Part shown: positions 2,243 through 36,544 of the stretch, in pieces
How positions within the stretch are numbered: position 1 is the first letter of the stretch
Layout: every line of letters starts with the position of its first letter
IMG/VR virus record: IMGVR_UViG_3300034072_001021
Location: 195,141-259,140 of that record
Reading direction: 5' to 3' (one strand)
Length of the DNA: 64,000 bases
Made by a program: the position numbers and the translations under genes
The notes under the pieces: generated by a model
Databases searched by the model: none
Seen by the model: the letters and a program-made list of their open reading frames with translations, nothing else
What the model was told of the DNA's origin: nothing

Positions 2243-4138
2243 ATGTCCGTCAACGATCCGCACAACGGTCAAGAATCCGTGAACACTGGCGCCGAGCAGC
2301 GTCAAGACCGTGCAGCCCCTCAGCAGCAACAGCGTCAGGCCCCGGTGGTTAACTCCATCCTCGACCTGAACCGTCTCCTGGGTGGCGGCATGTCCCGTCG
2401 CACCAGCGGTGAACAACTGATCGCCGCCATCGCCGCCTGCAAGTTCTGGTTCTCCGCTGACCGTCAACTGGCCGCCGCCGGTGGCATCGATCTGACCAAG
2501 ATCCAGGTGATCGGCCTGGAAGCTTCCGAGCACAACGTCGAGGTCTCCTCGGTCATCCTGGCCTACCCGGTCGAGTCCCAGGGCACCCTGCGTGTTCTGA
2601 CTCACTTCCTGGCCCTGGAATCCAGCCTGGCTGAAGAGAACCAGGTCCGTACCGTCAACCTGAACCATCGCGACTACCCGCTGCCGGTAGTGGTCTCCGA
2701 CTACATGACCGAGTCCTACATGGCTCTGGTCGATGAGATCGTGAAGAAGCACTTCGAGCAGTCCCGTCGCAACGTCGAAGTACAGCGTGCCGGCTGGCGC
2801 ACCGTCTCCCGCAAGGTCAACTTCTCCGAGCCGGAAAGCACCGAAGCCCGCAACGTCGTGTTCTACGCCCAGGCGGCCATCGTGGCCATGTACAACCACG
2901 TCTACGAGCGTGACCTGTACTTCAGCCTCGAGTGGCTGAGCAAGAACTCCACCCTCGAGATCTCGGTCGACATGTCCGGCCGTGAGGCCCACAGCGCCGA
3001 TGGCCTGCCGCGCCGCCGCGACATCGCGGTGAACGTAGCCGGTAAGGTGGCCAAGGGCGACCAGACTGCTTCGGTTGGCCTGGCCAGCCTGGGTGGTTAC
3101 GTCAGCCTGATGTACTCGCCGCCCCAGGACGAAGACCGCTGGAATCGCAACGTCCGTCGCGATACCCCGTACTTCACTCCGACCCTGATCATCAACGCCA
3201 TCGACACCGGCACCAACAGCATCACTGCTGAGCAGCTGCTGCTCGGTCTGGCCGGCGCTTCGGTGATCAGCTCCAACCAGGCGTGGGCTCAGACCTTCCT
3301 GCCGGGCGAAGTTGCCCGCGGTGAGATCGACTACCGTGACACCGGCCTCCTGGGCCTGCTCGGTCCGGACAAGACCGCTTTCGAGATCGAAGCACGTACC
3401 AACCTCGACACCGACAAGTGGGGTCAGTACTTCTTCTCCCTCGTGAACGAGAACCTGGCCTGGGCTATCGAACTCGAGGAGGGTGGTGACAACTCCTGGA
3501 TCATGGGTCTGCTGCTCGACGCTGCTTCCGACACCAGCCCGAACCGTGACGCCGTACGTCGTCTGTACGACTTCGCCGATCGTCTGACCAACAACAACTT
3601 CTCCCGTCGCGCTGCCGAACTGGACGTCACCGTCCCGCTGCAGCTGTCCGGTGCCCGTTACCTGACCGGTACCTGGATCGACGAGCGTGGTGAAGAGCGT
3701 GACCTGCGCGAGTGGGATCTGCTCCGTTGGATGGCCCAGAACCCGACCGACGAAGGCACCTCGGCCCTGAACTACCAGGACGTCATCGACCGCGTCGACC
3801 TAGACGTGGAAGTGCGCGTATCCGAGCAGTTCACCCAGCTGACCAGTGCTCTGGGCGCGTCGAACGTGAAGTTCAGCCGCTACGTCGACCTGGCGTACAT
3901 CAATCCGAAGTTCATCCAGGCCCTGGCCGCTGCTGTGGCAGACTGCAAGATCAACATCGATCAGCGCAGCGCTCACTACAGCTTCGGCGCTCGTCGTCTG
4001 CGTGGCAACACTCGCATCCGCGATTTCGTGGGTGGCGACCTGACCAACGGCATGCTGTCCAGCCGTCGGATCGGTGGCAACGAGCGTTCCCTGCGTGGTC
4101 ACGTGGGCAACGGCTTCGGCCATGGTTCGTCCTTCTAA
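2243..4138 (+). CDS. chmA: chimallin, phage nuclear shell protein
   Basis: 631 aa with a Q-rich flexible N-terminus; GTWIDERGEERDLREWDLL and NPKFIQAL match motifs recalled from known chimallins; directly upstream of the nvRNAP beta'-N gene; strong codon bias. Confidence 0.88.
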   Translation: MSVNDPHNGQESVNTGAEQRQDRAAPQQQQRQAPVVNSILDLNRLLGGGMSRRTSGEQLIAAIAACKFWFSADRQLAAAGGIDLTKIQVIGLEASEHNVEVSSVILAYPVESQGTLRVLTHFLALESSLAEENQVRTVNLNHRDYPLPVVVSDYMTESYMALVDEIVKKHFEQSRRNVEVQRAGWRTVSRKVNFSEPESTEARNVVFYAQAAIVAMYNHVYERDLYFSLEWLSKNSTLEISVDMSGREAHSADGLPRRRDIAVNVAGKVAKGDQTASVGLASLGGYVSLMYSPPQDEDRWNRNVRRDTPYFTPTLIINAIDTGTNSITAEQLLLGLAGASVISSNQAWAQTFLPGEVARGEIDYRDTGLLGLLGPDKTAFEIEARTNLDTDKWGQYFFSLVNENLAWAIELEEGGDNSWIMGLLLDAASDTSPNRDAVRRLYDFADRLTNNNFSRRAAELDVTVPLQLSGARYLTGTWIDERGEERDLREWDLLRWMAQNPTDEGTSALNYQDVIDRVDLDVEVRVSEQFTQLTSALGASNVKFSRYVDLAYINPKFIQALAAAVADCKINIDQRSAHYSFGARRLRGNTRIRDFVGGDLTNGMLSSRRIGGNERSLRGHVGNGFGHGSSF

Positions 4139-31750: not shown

Positions 31751-32197
31751 ATGTCATTGGACATCATCGAAGCCGATCTCTTCGATATCCAGGCAGATAC
31801 CAAAGTCATCACGATTAACCTCGTTGGTGCCATGGGTGCAGGTGTCGCAAAGACTGCCAGAGATACAATCCCTGGACTGTATAAGCATTACAAGAAGATG
31901 TATCCGACTATCACACCGGATCAATTCATCCAGTATACCTACGGTGGAGTGAAATACCTCCTCGTCCCCACGAAGATTGATTGGAAAGCTCCATCGCCTC
32001 GTGACCTCGTATTGTCCAACCTTCACCGGTTGGCGTATCTGACCCGACGCTATAACGGGTTTGGTACAGTAGCCTTGCCACCAATGGGGTGTGGTAATGG
32101 TGGGCTGGATTGGGAGAATGATATCGTGAATTTCTATCACGCGTTGTTCGACCACCATCCTAGTAAATTTATAGCAGTAATAAAACCAAACCAGTAA
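31751..32197 (+). CDS. macrodomain ADP-ribosylglycohydrolase (DarG/Poa1-like)
   Basis: ADLF, NLVGAMGAGVA, ALPPMGCGNGGLDW. Confidence 0.88.
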   Translation: MSLDIIEADLFDIQADTKVITINLVGAMGAGVAKTARDTIPGLYKHYKKMYPTITPDQFIQYTYGGVKYLLVPTKIDWKAPSPRDLVLSNLHRLAYLTRRYNGFGTVALPPMGCGNGGLDWENDIVNFYHALFDHHPSKFIAVIKPNQ

Positions 32198-32206
32198 GGG
32201 GAAACA

Positions 32207-32647
32207 ATGGAAACTGTACGTCTTACCAACATCGGCAAACACCATCTTCCGAATATCCCACATGACGCGCCGTTGATCAGTATCAACGACCGTTACTCTC
32301 CGGCTCCGGAGATCCCGAACCGTGACAAACGGCCTGTGCTGTTTGTCACGTTCTTTCCGGGTGACCACCTGACCAGTACCGAGCGCCATGAGGGCATGAC
32401 GCCAGACCTGGCCAAGAAGATCGTCAAGTTCGTGGAAGAGCACCGCGACAAGAAGCACATCTTCGTTCAGTGCGGTGAAGGTCGTATCCGTTCCTGGACG
32501 ATCTGCAGTGTACTGGAACGCATGCTCGACTTCACTGTTCATGATACCGAGCGTGCGACCATCAAGCAAGGCATGGTGGACAAATACACCCACCACATCC
32601 TGATGTCCACGATCGTGGATATGGAGCAGGCTGGTGAACTGCTGTAA
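32207..32647 (+). CDS. protein-tyrosine/dual-specificity phosphatase-like protein
   Basis: CX5R loop HIFVQCGEGRIRS; LISI N-terminal strand. Confidence 0.8.
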   Translation: METVRLTNIGKHHLPNIPHDAPLISINDRYSPAPEIPNRDKRPVLFVTFFPGDHLTSTERHEGMTPDLAKKIVKFVEEHRDKKHIFVQCGEGRIRSWTICSVLERMLDFTVHDTERATIKQGMVDKYTHHILMSTIVDMEQAGELL

Positions 32648-32655
32648 AAAATAAC
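32644..32655 (+). promoter_or_regulatory. GTAAAAAATAAC motif just upstream of structured RNA A
   Basis: Identical to 1981-1992. Confidence 0.4.
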
Positions 32656-32672
32656 GGCAGTAAGCTATATTT

Positions 32673-33098
32673 TGTAGAAGTGTCTGTCGCTCGAGTTGCC
32701 CCCGATAAGAGCGACAGACATGACTACACATCGTCCTTGCTGAATGAAGCCCGCGATGAAAAACAAGAGGCAGAAACAACGAGTGGGGTTAGTCGCCACT
32801 CTTGTCCAAAATGGTGAACTTACGGGGTAGCCTGAAAACTGTACCGGCTTAGTCAGCTGGTGAACCGTACGATCCTCTTCTGGATCTGGAGCGTAGCCCT
32901 CTCCATTCGGAGACGGTTAACTCCAGGGACTAATCCAGTTTTGGGTAAGTTGTTTGCGTATCTTTCTGCATAGCCTGACGAGGGCATAGCAGGACAGGAC
33001 GCACGCAGCCGTTGAGTCCTATAGATCCACCGGTGAGGCCGCCCGAAAGGGCCGCCGGGCTGCCGGGTACGGATTTGCTGGCCAGCCTATAGGACTCA
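32673..33098 (+). ncRNA. candidate large structured RNA A (about 425 nt)
   Basis: 12-bp stems 32681-32692/32709-32720 and 33013-33024/33087-33098, nested hairpins, a GAAA tetraloop, no credible ORF; strand inferred from flanking genes. Confidence 0.65.
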
Positions 33099-33131
33099 TA
33101 GTACTAATTCAACCACCATGAGGACGACCTC

Positions 33132-33302
33132 GTGATCCCAAGTGTGAATCTCTCCTCTCTGCGTCAGCTCAATCGTGATCGCGATTCGACGGACAACCGT
33201 CAGAAGACGCTTGATCGCGTTGCAGAGTACCGTGCTGCAGATGAGAAAGTCAAGCAGGTCTGTCAAGAGAAAGACCTCGAGATTCCTGAGATGCATTGTT
33301 AG
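33132..33302 (+). CDS. small hypothetical protein, 56 aa (not in ORF track)
   Basis: GTG start after GAGG; reads VIPSVNLSSLRQLNRDRD...EIPEMHC; stop overlaps the next RBS. Confidence 0.55.
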   Translation: MIPSVNLSSLRQLNRDRDSTDNRQKTLDRVAEYRAADEKVKQVCQEKDLEIPEMHC

Positions 33303-33311
33303 GAGTTTCTC

Positions 33312-33764
33312 ATGGAAATGTTCCTCGGTGTAAAGATCGTCGCAGCCAAACCCATGACCCGTCTGGAATACAACCAGTACCGTGGATGGGAACTGCCTAA
33401 GGACGAGCGTGGTGATGATGAAGGTTATCTCGTCGAGTACTTCGAGAGCGAACCCAACCATCCAGACCACAAAGGTTACATCAGCTGGTCTCCCAAAGAG
33501 CAGTTCGATAAAGCACATTACTCCATGGGCTTTGTGGGCGACCTACCTCCGTTCATTCAACGAATTCATGGTGAAGCTGCACAGCTCGTGCAAAACTGCA
33601 CCAAGATCACTGACTTCATTACCAAGTGCAATGAAGGACAGATCGAGAACATCAACCCACAGTACCTCGACCTCATGATTCGCCAACGTGCGGTCATGGA
33701 GACCCATCTGGGAATCCTGCGTGATCGTCTCGAAATGCTCGCTAAAGGGAAATCCACCCTATAG
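33312..33764 (+). CDS. two-domain candidate anti-defence nucleotide-sponge protein
   Basis: N-domain GVKIVAAKPMT..Y..YRGW..EGYLVEY..YISWSPKEQFDKA; C-terminal helical hairpin LMIRQRAVMETHLGILRDRL. Confidence 0.8.
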   Translation: MEMFLGVKIVAAKPMTRLEYNQYRGWELPKDERGDDEGYLVEYFESEPNHPDHKGYISWSPKEQFDKAHYSMGFVGDLPPFIQRIHGEAAQLVQNCTKITDFITKCNEGQIENINPQYLDLMIRQRAVMETHLGILRDRLEMLAKGKSTL

Positions 33765-33777
33765 TGTGCATATTACC

Positions 33778-34390
33778 GAAATACGAGTAATGGCAGAACA
33801 GACGGCAGCTATCACGGCGGCTTAAGGTGTTCTGTAAAGGGGTGGTTCCCGTTCCGTTACTGGTTTATCTTGAGATATACTCTGCCAATGGCTGACTGAC
33901 CGAGTGCACACTCCCTCAGGCTTCTGTAGCAAGAGAAGAACACAGCCAAGGGGCGGCGTTCTCAAGATTACAGGTGTTGGCTTCACCCAGCATCAAGTCC
34001 CAACGATTTATGGTAGCTTAAGTTCGAAGCGCCGATCGCCATTGTGCAGATAAGGCAGCGCGGATCGGATTGGGAGATTCCCGGTCGGCTACCACCCGTT
34101 AGGACATCCGTGTCCTTGATTCCATGTCAGTCGGCAACAGCTCTTCGTGGCAGTTCGCATTCAACGACTCGGCAGCCTACGTGGCGGCCAACTGGATAGA
34201 GGCACGGGTGTCCGTCTAAATCGGCAGACCTCGTGAGCTGTTGATCCAACCGACAACGATCAGAAACCTCCCTTCGTCGGGCGGCCAGATAGGTCATTAG
34301 TTGGTTGAAGACTCAGGGTGCCATCAGAACTGCACCCATGTACGCAAGTACATACCGAGGGGTTAAAGTCCCAAGCTCTGGCTCGTTTTC
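33778..34390 (+). ncRNA. candidate large structured RNA B (about 610 nt)
   Basis: Closing helix 33778-33787/34382-34390; helices 33867-33875/33960-33968 and 33891-33900/34126-34135; ends 3 nt before tRNA-Asn; no ORF of 60 aa or more in any frame. Confidence 0.7.
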
Positions 34391-34393
34391 AAT

Positions 34394-34468
34394 TCACGCT
34401 TAGCAAAGTGGTAATGCAGCAGACTGTTAATCTGCCTACCCCTGGTTCGAATCCAGGAGCGTGAGCCA
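34394..34468 (+). tRNA. tRNA-Asn (GTT)
   Basis: Acceptor TCACGCT/AGCGTGA, anticodon arm GCAGA-CTGTTAA-TCTGC, TTCGAAT loop, encoded CCA. Confidence 0.95.
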
Positions 34469-34469
34469 T

Positions 34470-34650
34470 ATCCGTAAACTACTGTTTCGACAGGAGGGGT
34501 GAAAATCCCAACACGGTGTCCCAGAAGTACCGGCGTAAGCTGGGTTCTCCGGGCCTTAACCTAGCTGGTTGACTGGTCGGTGCTTTGCATCTAAGTCCGC
34601 TTCAGGACATCAACTATAAATAGGGCTGGAGACAGCCCCATTTATTCTCT
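34470..34650 (+). ncRNA. candidate structured RNA C ending in a GNRA terminator-like hairpin
   Basis: GGGG-TGAAAAT-CCC T-loop-like element, GGC-GTAA-GCT, GGGCTG-GAGA-CAGCCC then T-rich. Confidence 0.4.
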
Positions 34651-34670
34651 TTCGTCAGAAAGGGAAGAAT

Positions 34671-34796
34671 TCAAGTGATTGGAAACCGTGCACCGTGTGA
34701 TTCGGGCTTAGCCTTAAGACACCATTAACGTCTGAGGGGTGATCCTTTACAACCGCATCTGCAGTTGTGGTGGTTTGACTCCACCCGCTTGTCTCA
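34671..34796 (+). ncRNA. tRNA-like element with expanded core
   Basis: T-arm GGTGG-TTTGACT-CCACC (34769-34785); CAAGTG/CGCTTG acceptor-like pairing. Confidence 0.35.
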
Positions 34797-34800
34797 AACC

Positions 34801-34887
34801 GGGGAGCCCCCAGAGGGTGCTAATCTAGCCCGCTACATCCGTACTCTCCCGTCGGGTACACCAGGGTGTCTGGCCTGCTCCCCACCT
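34801..34887 (+). pseudogene. degenerate tRNA-like element
   Basis: Perfect 7-bp GGGGAGC/GCTCCCC followed by ACCT; internal CCCG/CGGG and CCAG/CTGG stems; no TTC loop. Confidence 0.45.
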
Positions 34888-34892
34888 ATTTC

Positions 34893-34966
34893 GCCTCTAT
34901 AGCTGGAAGGTCAAGCAGCTCACTTGTAATGAGCCGATCTCAGTTCGATTCTGAGTGGAGGCACCA
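34893..34966 (+). tRNA. tRNA-Thr (TGT)
   Basis: Acceptor GCCTCTA/TGGAGGC, anticodon arm GCTCA-CTTGTAA-TGAGC, TTCGATT loop, encoded CCA. Confidence 0.95.
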
Positions 34967-34970
34967 TATT

Positions 34971-35341
34971 GGGACTGATCGGCGTCGTCACTGGTTATTC
35001 TGAAACCTAAATGCGCAAGCACATGGTTATGGATATAAACGATCAACGAAAGTGAAGTCGTTGCAATGACGAACGATCAGCCCCTCTCAAGCGCGCTTGT
35101 AAGAATGTACTCGGTTGCCGATCCAAAGTAACCCTCGTAAGGTGAATTCAGCGTATAGACCTCAGGATGAGGGAAAATGCCCGGACACGAGAGGAACACA
35201 TTCTTACAAGTGGATTATTTACCGTGTAGTCTCTCAGGCGGGACACTCTCCACAGGAGCCTTCGGCACCACCACCCCACCCTATAGTGACTGGTGACCTG
35301 TTGGTGTGGAGAGGCATGTTCGATTCTAGTGCACGGTACCC
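34971..35341 (+). ncRNA. candidate structured RNA D (about 370 nt, tmRNA-sized, tRNA-like ends)
   Basis: Starts 4 nt after tRNA-Thr; 13-bp perfect helix 35096-35108/35198-35210; GNRA and UUCG hairpins; GGGACTG/CGGT(A)CCC end pairing. Confidence 0.6.
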
Positions 35342-35477
35342 TATTTCGATGATCGGCCTCGACTGCTGGCAGTGTGCCCTCAGGGTTGTGGAGATAACCT
35401 GAACGGATGACGGCAGTAAGGGCGGTGTCCACTACCCTAGAAACTTGGGTCATCGAACGAACAAAAGGACAGTGAAT

Positions 35478-35933
35478 GTGAAATGGGTCACCTGGATCGT
35501 TTCGTTATTGTTCGTGTTTGTCATGCACTACGCCGACGCTTACCCTCTCACCGAGATCAAACTTCTCAGTGATGACGTGACCAGCGTTTATGATGGCGAT
35601 ACGCTCACTGTCCAAGTGCCCTACATTCCAGACGTGTTTGGTAAAGACCTCTCCATCCGGATTGTGGGTATTGACACACCTGAGATGCGTAGTACGTGCG
35701 CAACTAAGGAACAACGTGATCGTGAGAAAGCTTTGGCCATCAGGGCCAGAGACGTAGTGGTTGCCATGGTTACATCGGGTCATCGAGTGACCCTGACCAA
35801 CCTCGATCGAGATAAATACTTCCGTATGCTAGCAAGTGTTTATGTCGACGGACGAAGTGTTTCCGATGAGCTGATAGCTCAAGGACTAGCCGTCCCTTAT
35901 TCAGGCGACACCAAGATAGGCTGGTGTGGCTAA
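35478..35933 (+). CDS. thermonuclease (SNase-like) with N-terminal signal/TM anchor
   Basis: VYDGDT, IRIVGIDTPE, DKYFRMLA, LIAQGLA; hydrophobic WVTWIVSLLFVFVM; GTG start after AAAGGA. Confidence 0.9.
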   Translation: MKWVTWIVSLLFVFVMHYADAYPLTEIKLLSDDVTSVYDGDTLTVQVPYIPDVFGKDLSIRIVGIDTPEMRSTCATKEQRDREKALAIRARDVVVAMVTSGHRVTLTNLDRDKYFRMLASVYVDGRSVSDELIAQGLAVPYSGDTKIGWCG

Positions 35934-35985: not shown

Positions 35986-35995
35986 AATGGAGGTT

Positions 35996-36544
35996 ATGAT
36001 GGGTAAACTAACGGGCTGGACTGTCGACGACGAGGAAGAAGTATTCGTTCCCTGTCCAGACTATCCAGACCTTTTCGACATAGGTTCTAAAGGGACTCTT
36101 AGAAGCCGCCGTACTGGTAAAATCTTATCCCAAACCCCTGACCATAAAGGCTACCTTAGACATGCCACTAAAATAGGCGGTCGTTCAGGTAAGTCGATTT
36201 GCGTAAGGGTTCATGTTCAGGTTGCTAAAGCATTTGTTGGAAGAGAATCTGACGATCTGCAAGTAAACCATCTGACAGGCGATAAGGCAAAGAACGATTA
36301 TACATCTCTCGAATGGTGCACTGGTAGTCAGAACTTAGAGCATGCACATGCTACTGGCTTAATGCGTAATGCCAAGGGAGTTGACCATCCATTAGCAGCA
36401 CTTTCTCCCGAAGATGTTGCGGTTATACTTTCTCTTAAAGGGAAGGTTAGTCAGAGAGAACTCGGAAGAAGATTTGGGGTAAATAAATCAACCATAGCCA
36501 GAGTCCATAATGGAATCGGTTATGGTGAAGAAGACCCTAGCTAG
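35996..36544 (+). CDS. free-standing HNH homing endonuclease (NUMOD4-like N-terminus, HTH C-terminus)
   Basis: VHVQVAKAF..QVNHLTGDKAKN..LEWCT..QN; C-terminal SQRELGRRFGVNKSTIARV. Confidence 0.88.
   Translation: MMGKLTGWTVDDEEEVFVPCPDYPDLFDIGSKGTLRSRRTGKILSQTPDHKGYLRHATKIGGRSGKSICVRVHVQVAKAFVGRESDDLQVNHLTGDKAKNDYTSLEWCTGSQNLEHAHATGLMRNAKGVDHPLAALSPEDVAVILSLKGKVSQRELGRRFGVNKSTIARVHNGIGYGEEDPS

What the first reader, a model, noticed from the sequence alone, without database searches (positions are those of the whole stretch)
33312..33764. Candidate two-in-one immune-signal sponge
Seen: two modules. From memory, the N-domain (GYLVEY...YISWSPK..F) is the phage domain often fused to DUF2829/Tad2 and may be the Acb4-type cyclic-nucleotide sponge. 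The C-terminal helical hairpin resembles the crAss001_48-like family. Both family labels are unverified. Inference: a fusion that could sequester CBASS and Thoeris-type signals, which the phage nucleus cannot block.
Basis: inference. Interest (0 to 1): 0.6.

Follow-up and report, generated by a model that had tools for sequence, protein, structure and literature searches.

The report
Thoeris-signal sponge with unexplained partner domain
This small gene of a nucleus-forming giant phage most likely makes a protein that soaks up a bacterial alarm molecule (3'cADPR), and it is fused to a very conserved small domain of unknown job that turns up next to five different phage "sponge" families.

Summary
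The ORF at 33312-33764 (+) is real: 150 aa, with a good ribosome-binding site and hundreds of homologues.

**C-terminal hairpin (aa 79-141).** It matches Pfam PF21825 above threshold. That family is now characterised as Sequestin, a dimeric sponge for 3'cADPR, the signal of type I Thoeris. All four published ligand-contact residues are kept (R84, E88, Q125, R139). A homodimer is predicted (score 0.83, best control 0.00).

**N-terminal domain (aa 1-72).** It is not Acb4:
- it has no PF13876 match;
- its fold differs from Acb4's;
- Acb4 sits beside it as a separate domain in other proteins.

It is a large family without a Pfam model (2,474 cluster representatives). Members occur alone or fused to Tad2, Sequestin, Acb4, the Acb2/Tad1 hairpin and RyR-Tad. 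It is homologous to the N-domain of RyR-Tad gp68, which forms a strand-swapped dimer of unknown function. It is far more conserved than the sponge domain (66% against 35% identity).

**Context.** The phage encodes chimallin and PhuZ homologues, so the phage-nucleus context holds.

**Verdict.** This is a probable anti-Thoeris sponge. The CBASS claim is unsupported. The N-domain is the open lead.

The parts
33312..33764 (+). Whole gene, 150 aa: N-domain fused to a Sequestin domain
   Evidence: The ORF is listed. It has 599 homologues. The AF2 model has pLDDT 95.3. A homodimer is predicted with ipSAE 0.83 against a best control of 0.00.
33301..33305 (+). Shine-Dalgarno AGGAG, 6 nt upstream of the ATG. 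It overlaps the TAG stop of the upstream small ORF.
   Evidence: Read directly from the sequence.
33312..33527 (+). N-terminal conserved domain (aa 1-72). It is a small beta-rich fold, matches phrog_872 and has no Pfam family.
33546..33734 (+). Sequestin domain (aa 79-141), Pfam PF21825 / crAss001_48, a helical hairpin
   Evidence: PF21825 matches at E 1.6e-9 with 37.9 bits in the whole protein, and 40.2 bits for the domain alone, against a cut-off of 24.8. It is the only PF21825 match in the genome. Helices run 80-107 and 116-144.
33561..33563 (+). Codon of R84, equivalent to SequestinA R8 and T4 Y16O R7 (phosphate contact)
   Evidence: The column is invariant in alignments A1 and A3.
33573..33575 (+). 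Codon of E88, equivalent to SequestinA E12 and Y16O E11 (ribose contact, essential)
   Evidence: The column is invariant in A1 and A3. It lies in the predicted dimer interface.
33684..33686 (+). Codon of Q125, equivalent to SequestinA Q47 and Y16O Q45 (essential)
   Evidence: The column is invariant in A1 and A3. It lies in the predicted dimer interface.
33726..33728 (+). Codon of R139, equivalent to SequestinA R61 and Y16O R59 (essential)
   Evidence: The column is at least 90% conserved in A1 and invariant in A3. It lies in the predicted dimer interface.
33132..33302 (+). Small upstream ORF (56 aa, GTG start). It is conserved next to the gene in the related phage, and its stop overlaps this gene's ribosome-binding site.
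   Evidence: The ORF is listed. tblastn to pPa_SNUABM_DT01 PA10_00178 gives E 4.6e-10. It has no Pfam or PHROG family.

Best explanation
The gene encodes a homodimeric anti-defence protein of a nucleus-forming jumbo phage, probably one that infects Pseudomonas.

C-terminal domain. The C-terminal helical hairpin is a Sequestin-family sponge. Two hairpins pack into a dimer. The conserved R84, E88, Q125 and R139 at the interface form pockets that bind 3'cADPR (also called 1''-3' gcADPR). That is the signal made by the ThsB TIR protein of type I Thoeris. With the signal sequestered, the ThsA NADase is not switched on and NAD+ is not depleted.

N-terminal domain. The 72-aa N-terminal domain is a separate, mobile and very conserved module. 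It dimerises by swapping its first beta strand. My best reading is that it has an activity of its own, binding or processing some other conserved small molecule or target, and is more than a structural clamp.

Basis of each step. Family membership, residue conservation and the predicted dimer are shown here. Ligand binding and Thoeris inhibition are inferred from characterised relatives. The N-domain's own activity is inference.
For: Sequestin membership:
- PF21825 matches above the curated cut-off.
- PF21825 is Sequestin: 10 of 13 tested members inhibit type I Thoeris. One purified member (SequestinA) depleted and then released 3'cADPR in vitro, and lysates of cells expressing family members no longer activated ThsA.
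- The Sequestin domain of Ab09 gp59 has been crystallised as an antiparallel dimer.
- The R/E/Q/R residues whose mutation kills SequestinA and SequestinB are invariant here, and they align with those of T4 Y16O and Ab09 gp59.

Dimer:
- The predicted homodimer scores 0.83 against a best control of 0.00. That mark was reached by 20 of 30 solved homodimers and 1 of 23 monomers. Runs agree in at least 93% of contacts, and partner pLDDT is at least 89.
- The interface contains E88, Q125 and R139, and strand beta1 (residues 2-7) pairs with residues 9-12 and 69-72 of the other chain.
- This matches the strand-swapped N-domain dimer reported for gp68.

N-domain independence:
- It occurs as stand-alone ORFs of 73-84 aa.
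- It occurs as a separate gene directly upstream of separate Acb4 and Sequestin genes (L016).
- Mean pairwise identity is 66% in the N-domain against 35% in the sponge domain of the same proteins. Of the 33 positions at least 90% conserved, 27 lie outside the predicted dimer interface.

Context:
- A syntenic orthologue exists in Pseudomonas phage pPa_SNUABM_DT01.
- The genome encodes chimallin and PhuZ homologues.
Against: - No binding or plaque data exist for this protein or for any N-domain+Sequestin fusion. The tested Sequestins A-J are stand-alone proteins of 65-87 aa.
- 3 of the 13 tested PF21825 proteins were inactive.
- The only tested N-domain, gp68 residues 1-86, showed no anti-Thoeris-I activity. 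That copy lacks the YRGW and NHPDH motifs.
- The N-domain is acidic (mean net charge -4.6), unlike the positively charged pockets typical of sponges.
- The dimer is a prediction and may reflect the model's memory of similar complexes.
Confidence: 0.7

Rival explanations
1. The N-domain is an Acb4-type cyclic-nucleotide sponge, so the protein sequesters both CBASS and Thoeris signals.
For: The N-domain is found in the same proteins and gene cassettes as genuine sponges, Acb4 among them. Dual-sponge fusions are a documented strategy.
Against: Acb4 is PF13876. No PF13876 match exists in this protein or anywhere in the genome. hhalign against N4 gp48 gives 0.3% probability. Acb4 has a dsRBD alpha-beta-beta-beta-alpha fold, while this domain is beta-beta-alpha-beta-beta-alpha-beta. 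No sponge structure appears among the PDB fold matches. PF13876 sits next to this domain as a distinct unit in P0085.
Confidence: 0.04
2. The N-domain is only a structural accessory. It is a strand-swapped dimerisation clamp that stabilises or orients whatever sponge domain it is fused to, and it has no ligand or target of its own.
For: In the gp68 crystal the domain forms a beta1-swapped dimer, and gp68_N alone has no anti-Thoeris activity. The predicted dimer here shows the same swap. The domain is fused to sponges that all act as oligomers.
Against: Sequestin, Tad2 and Acb4 oligomerise without it. It exists as a stand-alone gene in many phages, for example next to dUTPase in one lineage. 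Of its 33 best-conserved residues, 27 lie outside the predicted interface, among them R17, R24, W26, E32, D36, E37, N49, H53, Y56, W59 and K62. It is far more conserved than its partners.
Confidence: 0.25
3. The N-domain inhibits a host protein directly, for example a TIR, NADase or other defence component, as Tad3-Tad8 do. It would not bind a small molecule.
Confidence: 0.15
4. The protein has no role in counter-defence. The helical hairpin would be a generic coiled coil with a structural or regulatory job.
For: Helical hairpins give many unspecific fold matches.
Against: The HMM match is specific and above threshold, and all four functional residues are invariant. The family's partners are overwhelmingly known sponges.
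Confidence: 0.04

Closest known systems
Sequestin family (Pfam PF21825, formerly crAss001_48). Members include SequestinA-J, T4 Y16O and the C-domain of Pseudomonas phage Ab09 gp59.
   Same: It is a helical hairpin of about 60 aa with an HMM match above the cut-off. The R/E/Q/R ligand-contact residues are conserved. It is predicted to form a dimer with those residues at the interface. It is encoded by a phage.
   Different: Here the hairpin follows a 72-aa N-terminal domain. The experimentally tested Sequestins are stand-alone or fused to Acb4. The loop between the helices is 2-3 residues longer than in T4 Y16O and the other aligned Sequestins. Sequence identity to T4 Y16O and Ab09 gp59 is only 16%.
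N-terminal domain of RyR-Tad (Pectobacterium phage vB_PatP_CB1 gp68)
   Same: The two domains are homologous (hhalign 97.1% probability, E 4.9e-11). Both lie N-terminal to a gcADPR sponge. The beta1 strand-swapped dimer seen in the gp68 crystal is reproduced by the prediction here.
   Different: The gp68 copy is degenerate and lacks the YRGW and NHPDH motifs. Its partner is a RyR-repeat domain, not Sequestin. Its coordinates were not in the PDB copy searched.
Escherichia phage N4 gp49 (N-domain + Tad2-like/DUF2829)
   Same: It has the same N-domain, about 48% identical. The domain is again fused to a Thoeris sponge domain, and the gene lies next to N4 gp48, an Acb4.
   Different: The partner is Tad2-like (PF11195) rather than Sequestin. 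N4 is a podovirus and does not form a nucleus.
Acb4 (Bacillus phage SPO1; Pfam PF13876, N4 gp48)
   Same: It is a small phage anti-defence module found in the same fusions and cassettes.
   Different: It is unrelated in sequence and in fold (dsRBD-like tetramer that binds 3'3'-cGAMP). It is absent from this protein and from this genome.
Pseudomonas phage pPa_SNUABM_DT01 PA10_00177
   Same: It is the syntenic orthologue: 48% identical over 148 aa, with PF21825 at 46.7 bits. The gene neighbourhood is the same: hub protein, a 140-aa ORF, a Macro-like ORF, a phosphatase-like ORF, then this gene and tRNA-Asn.
   Different: It is 263 aa long, with an extra C-terminal region of about 115 aa that has no family. 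In the record it is annotated only as hypothetical, with a decoration-protein note.

Membership tests
Sequestin (PF21825) | Match to the PF21825 profile above Pfam's gathering score | tested here: met
   The whole protein scores 37.9 bits and the domain alone 40.2 bits, against a cut-off of 24.8. In the genome scan the match scores 39.5 bits and is flagged as over the cut-off.
Sequestin (PF21825) | Alpha-helical hairpin of about 60-80 aa | tested here: met
   AF2 gives helices 80-107 and 116-144, with block pLDDT of 95-98.
Sequestin (PF21825) | Conserved signal-contact residues (SequestinA R8, E12, Q47, R61; SequestinB R7, E11, Q45, R59) | tested here: met
   R84, E88, Q125 and R139 align with R7, E11, Q45 and R59 of T4 Y16O and with the equivalent residues of Ab09 gp59. 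These columns are invariant in A3 and invariant or at least 90% conserved in A1.
Sequestin (PF21825) | Homodimer (or tetramer) with pockets at the protomer interface | tested here: met
   This is a prediction only: ipSAE 0.83 against a best control of 0.00. Residues 83, 86-88, 124-125 and 138-139 lie in the interface, and residue 135 contacts 125 of the other chain.
Sequestin (PF21825) | Binds and releases 3'cADPR and cancels type I Thoeris defence | not testable with these tools
   This needs biochemistry and plaque assays. 10 of 13 tested family members were active.
Acb4 (PF13876, Phage_gp49_66) | Match to the PF13876 profile | tested here: not met
   There is no hit at E<=10 on the N-domain, none on the whole protein and none in the whole genome at E<=0.1.
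Acb4 (PF13876, Phage_gp49_66) | dsRBD-like alpha-beta-beta-beta-alpha fold | tested here: not met
   The model topology is beta-beta-alpha-beta-beta-alpha-beta. No Acb4 (9E4W) or dsRBD entry appears among the listed PDB fold matches. hhalign against N4 gp48 gives 0.3% probability.
Acb4 (PF13876, Phage_gp49_66) | Tetramer that binds 3'3'-cGAMP | not testable with these tools
   No assay is available here.
Tad2 (PF11195, DUF2829) | Match to the PF11195 profile | tested here: not met
   There is no hit in the protein or in the genome. In relatives PF11195 lies C-terminal to the N-domain as a separate unit, for example P0043 residues 76-161.
Unnamed N-domain family (phrog_872; N-domains of N4 gp49 and RyR-Tad gp68) | Sequence homology to the family | tested here: met
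   phrog_872 matches at E 1.5e-23. Identity to the N-domains of Tad2 fusions is 65-72%. hhalign to gp68 gives 97.1% probability. ESM-Atlas fold matches reach TM 0.86-0.87.
Unnamed N-domain family (phrog_872; N-domains of N4 gp49 and RyR-Tad gp68) | Dimer with a swapped beta1 strand, as in the gp68 crystal | tested here: met
   This is a prediction only. Residues 3-7 of one chain contact residues 9-12 and 69-72 of the other, with expected errors of 0.5-0.7 A. The crystal is described.
Unnamed N-domain family (phrog_872; N-domains of N4 gp49 and RyR-Tad gp68) | A defined biochemical function | not testable with these tools
   None is known. The only test reported, gp68_N against type I Thoeris, was negative.

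The most novel reading that the evidence does not exclude
The 72-aa N-domain is itself a new, widespread anti-defence module: a sponge, a signal-processing enzyme or a binder of a universal target. It is the commonest unannotated fusion partner of phage sponge domains, namely Tad2, Sequestin, Acb4, the Acb2/Tad1 hairpin and RyR-Tad. This protein would then be a true two-in-one inhibitor. About 50 of the 150 best N-domain representatives match none of the partner Pfam families; roughly 45 of them carry an unannotated extra region, which would then flag further undiscovered sponge families.
Probability: 0.4. Interest if true: 0.8.

Novelty: new variant of a known kind. Interest (0 to 1): 0.55.

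Why it matters
Nucleus-forming jumbo phages shield their DNA from nucleases. They should still be exposed to small-molecule alarm systems that kill the cell from the cytoplasm, so a Sequestin-type sponge in such a phage fits that expected weakness and can be tested.

The wider point is the N-domain.
- Sequestin was itself discovered because it is fused to known sponges.
- By the same logic, this domain is the next candidate. It has no Pfam family and 2,474 cluster representatives. It is fused to five unrelated sponge families, also occurs alone, and is much more conserved than its partners.
- Finding its ligand or target could add a new class of immune-evasion module.
- It could also serve as a search handle for unknown sponge domains.

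Tried and rejected
- **PDB by sequence.** Searching with the protein, the full-length profile and the N-domain profile gave nothing relevant. The gp68 and Ab09 Sequestin crystal structures are evidently not in the copy searched (one search found only RyR-repeat entries).
- **Fold searches, full model.** Foldseek found no match with E<=0.001, and the VIA search returned only generic helical hairpins.
- **tblastn of the Sequestin domain against phages.** It was too insensitive, giving 3 weak hits. I replaced it with a PF21825 scan of the T4, Ab09 and N4 records.
- **TadIV-1 and Tad3-8.** I considered them as identities for the N-domain. I rejected TadIV-1 from its published description as a two-helix protein with a flexible loop. 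Tad3 is described with N-terminal helices, and Tad4, Tad6 and Tad7 act through active-site-blocking loops. No sequence or structure comparison with Tad3-8 was made.
- **Literature on the N-domain.** Searches for N4 gp49, or for Tad2 with an N-terminal domain, found only the gp68 remark.
- **Own protein in the published Sequestin table.** It was not found in the stored part, and the file is truncated.
- **NARP1 genes near the Macro-like neighbour.** None are present in the genome.
- **Sequencing runs.** No read-based check was made and I tried no other route.
- **Tree of N-domains labelled by partner.** Partner labels are almost random on the tree: 74 changes against 81.4 +/- 3.3 when shuffled, and 22 against 27.1 +/- 2.4 for Tad2 versus Sequestin. 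The tree is a FastTree of a 75-aa domain and is poorly resolved. It shows only that N-domains do not sort by partner.

Full report
**1. Observation**

The window holds an ORF at 33312-33764 on the + strand, giving 150 aa. An AGGAG ribosome-binding site at 33301-33305 lies 6 nt before the ATG. It overlaps the TAG stop of a 56-aa upstream ORF. The word search found 599 proteins at E<=1e-3, the best 91% identical, so this is a real gene and not a chance frame.

AlphaFold2, run on an alignment of 59 full-length homologues, gives a confident model (pLDDT 95.3, pTM 0.82). A beta-beta-alpha-beta-beta-alpha-beta domain spans residues 1-73. A helical hairpin follows, with helices 80-107 and 116-144.

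**2. The C-terminal module**

- Residues 79-141 match Pfam PF21825 (crAss001_48) at E 1.6e-9 and 37.9 bits, against a curated cut-off of 24.8. The domain alone scores 40.2 bits. This is the only PF21825 match in the 259-kb genome.
- PF21825 is no longer a family of unknown function. Tal et al. (bioRxiv 10.1101/2025.07.12.664507) found it as the commonest family fused to Tad2 and to Acb4.
  - They showed that 10 of 13 tested members cancel type I Thoeris.
  - They showed that one purified member (SequestinA) binds and releases 3'cADPR, and named the family Sequestin.
  - Dimer models place the ligand between protomers, contacted by R8, E12, Q47 and R61 of SequestinA. Alanine substitutions of E, Q and R abolish activity.
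[quoted passage not shown] - I fetched T4 Y16O, a validated 64-aa Sequestin, and Ab09 gp59, and aligned them with the present C-domain and six relatives. The columns holding R84, E88, Q125 and R139 are invariant. They coincide with R7, E11, Q45 and R59 of Y16O.
- In the 59-sequence family alignment, R84, E88 and Q125 are invariant and R139 is at least 90% conserved.

**3. The N-terminal module is not Acb4**

- Acb4 is Pfam PF13876, a dsRBD-like tetramer that binds 3'3'-cGAMP.
- The N-domain gives no Pfam hit even at E<=10.
- PF13876 finds nothing anywhere in the genome.
- A profile of the N-domain against N4 gp48, a genuine Acb4, gives 0.3% probability.
- The topology differs from a dsRBD.
- In proteins such as P0085, PF13876 (residues 21-92) sits beside the N-domain and PF21825 as a third, separate unit.

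**4. What the N-domain is**

Family and fold:
- It matches phrog_872 (E 1.5e-23, function unknown).

Relation to known proteins:
- It is homologous to the N-terminal domain of Pectobacterium phage CB1 gp68, "RyR-Tad" (hhalign 97.1% probability, E 4.9e-11, 69 columns).
[quoted passage not shown] It has no anti-Thoeris-I activity on its own. In the crystal it forms a dimer by inserting strand beta1 into the other protomer.
- The gp68 copy lacks the YRGW and NHPDH motifs that are nearly invariant elsewhere. Its negative result therefore says little about canonical copies.
- N4 gp49 is the N-domain plus a Tad2-like domain, and it lies next to gp48, an Acb4.

Size and partners:
- A profile search of 1.84 billion cluster representatives found 2,474 members at E<=1e-3 and 1,284 at E<=1e-10.
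- Among the best 150, Pfam finds Tad2-like in 48, Sequestin in 40, Acb4 in 13, the Acb2/Tad1 hairpin in 2, and WDGH and DUF7307 in 1 each. About 50 have no partner family.
- By my own HMM labelling, 55 of the 150 show only the N-domain. About 10 of these are stand-alone (105 aa or less). About 45 carry extra regions that mostly do not resemble one another.
- ESM-Atlas structure matches give the same picture. There are clusters of N+Tad2, N+Sequestin, Acb4+N+Sequestin and N+Sequestin+Tad2, and stand-alone clusters of 114 and 58 members.

Gene context elsewhere:
- On one N4-like contig a stand-alone N-domain gene is followed directly by separate Acb4 and Sequestin genes (L016).
- In another phage lineage it overlaps the end of a dUTPase gene.

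Conservation:
- Within the 59 N+Sequestin proteins, the N-domain averages 66% pairwise identity and the Sequestin domain 35%.
- Of the 33 N-domain positions at least 90% conserved, 27 lie outside the predicted dimer interface.
- The domain is acidic, with a mean net charge of -4.6.
- N-domains do not sort by partner on a tree: 74 label changes against 81.4 +/- 3.3 when shuffled. The tree is poorly resolved.

**5. Assembly**

- A two-copy prediction of the full protein scored ipSAE 0.83 (three runs, 0.83-0.84) against 0.00 for the best of three controls.
- That mark was reached by 20 of 30 proteins solved as homodimers and by 1 of 23 solved as single chains.
- Runs agree in at least 93% of contacts, and partner pLDDT is at least 89.
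- My own alignment was used, so these calibration counts hold only roughly.
- The interface has two parts.
  - Residues 1-13 and 67-76 of the N-domain, with residues 3-7 of one chain against 9-12 and 69-72 of the other. This is the beta1 swap described for gp68.
  - Hairpin residues 83-146, which include E88, Q125 and R139, with residue 135 touching 125 of the partner chain.
- This supports dimerisation but does not show it.

**6. Genome context**

- The window is the last 64 kb of a complete 259,140-bp virus record with direct terminal repeats.
- The genome encodes a homologue of phiKZ chimallin gp54 (E 4.2e-22, window 2543-4060). It also encodes a homologue of the tubulin PhuZ (E 2.7e-30, upstream of the window). 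The phage-nucleus premise is therefore sound.
- The nearest isolate is Pseudomonas phage pPa_SNUABM_DT01.
  - It shares the local gene order, with these protein identities: hub protein 64%, a 140-aa ORF 62%, a Macro-like ORF 59%, a phosphatase-like ORF 42%, and this gene 48%. tRNA-Asn follows.
  - Its orthologue PA10_00177 carries PF21825 plus an extra C-terminal region of about 115 aa.
- No Tad2 or Acb4 domain occurs in the genome.

**7. Mechanism**

- Shown here: Sequestin membership, conserved contact residues and a predicted dimer with those residues at the interface.
- Inferred from characterised relatives: the dimer sequesters 3'cADPR made by ThsB, so ThsA is not activated and NAD+ is spared.
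- Inferred from general knowledge: a protein shell around the DNA does not stop a cytoplasmic NADase response, which would make such a sponge useful to this phage.
- For the N-domain I favour an independent activity. The stand-alone genes, the conservation outside the interface and the five unrelated partner families point that way. A purely structural clamp and a direct protein inhibitor remain live rivals.
- Nothing supports binding of CBASS signals.

**8. Novelty**

- N-domain+Sequestin proteins already appear in the published Sequestin homologue table. At least 34 in the stored part carry YISWSPK. All Sequestins tested there are stand-alone.
- The gene is therefore a variant of a known sponge kind. 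The N-domain is the uncharacterised part and the real lead.

**9. Limits**

- No ligand, host or expression data could be obtained.

Noticed in passing
window 31751-32197 (+) and 32207-32647 (+): Two accessory ORFs lie directly upstream. One is Macro-like: phrog_335 'phosphatase' at E 4e-23, with Pfam Macro at E 0.006, below the cut-off. The other is a weak match to a dual-specificity phosphatase. Both are syntenic with pPa_SNUABM_DT01 (59% and 42% identity). Macro-domain ADPR-1''-phosphate phosphatases are a published phage counter-defence. This genome, however, has no NARP1-type genes, so the role of these ORFs is open. Together with the sponge gene they may form a small island of genes that handle ADP-ribose derivatives.
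   Followed up: partly
window 33132-33302 (+): A 56-aa ORF with a GTG start ends on the sponge gene's ribosome-binding site. It is homologous to PA10_00178 of pPa_SNUABM_DT01 (E 4.6e-10). There it lies just downstream of the orthologous sponge gene instead of upstream. It has no Pfam or PHROG family.
   Followed up: partly
L017 10207-10998 (pPa_SNUABM_DT01 PA10_00177): The orthologue in the related isolate is annotated as hypothetical with a 'decoration protein' note. It is in fact N-domain + Sequestin (PF21825, 46.7 bits) plus a C-terminal extension of about 115 aa with no family.
   Followed up: partly
window 33765-35444: This is a 1.7-kb stretch with no long ORF. It holds tRNA-Asn (34394-34468) and tRNA-Thr (34893-34966), and the rest is unexplained. 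No sigma-70-type promoter or intrinsic terminator pattern was found in 32500-34500.
   Followed up: partly
window 2543-4060 (+); G000:C1:185665-186618: A chimallin (nuclear shell) homologue matches phiKZ gp54 at 24% identity, E 4.2e-22. A PhuZ tubulin homologue matches at 27% identity, E 2.7e-30. They mark this 259-kb phage as a distant nucleus-forming relative of phiKZ.
   Followed up: yes
L016 4001-4881: An N4-like 75-kb metagenomic contig carries three consecutive small genes: a stand-alone N-domain (82 aa), Acb4 (120 aa) and Sequestin (76 aa). These are the unfused version of the three-domain proteins seen elsewhere.
   Followed up: no
proteins P0271, P0287, P0288, P0291 (residues about 77-205), with about 45 further N-domain proteins: Many N-domain proteins carry partner regions of 60-160 aa with no Pfam family, and these regions mostly do not resemble one another. 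One small cluster of four has a partner of about 120 aa. These are candidate undiscovered sponge or anti-defence domains.
   Followed up: partly
window 35445-35933 (+) and 35987-36544 (+): Just past the tRNAs lie an SNase-like nuclease with an N-terminal hydrophobic segment (Pfam SNase, E 3.7e-11) and an HNH/NUMOD4 homing-endonuclease-like ORF (phrog_59, E 9e-33).
   Followed up: no
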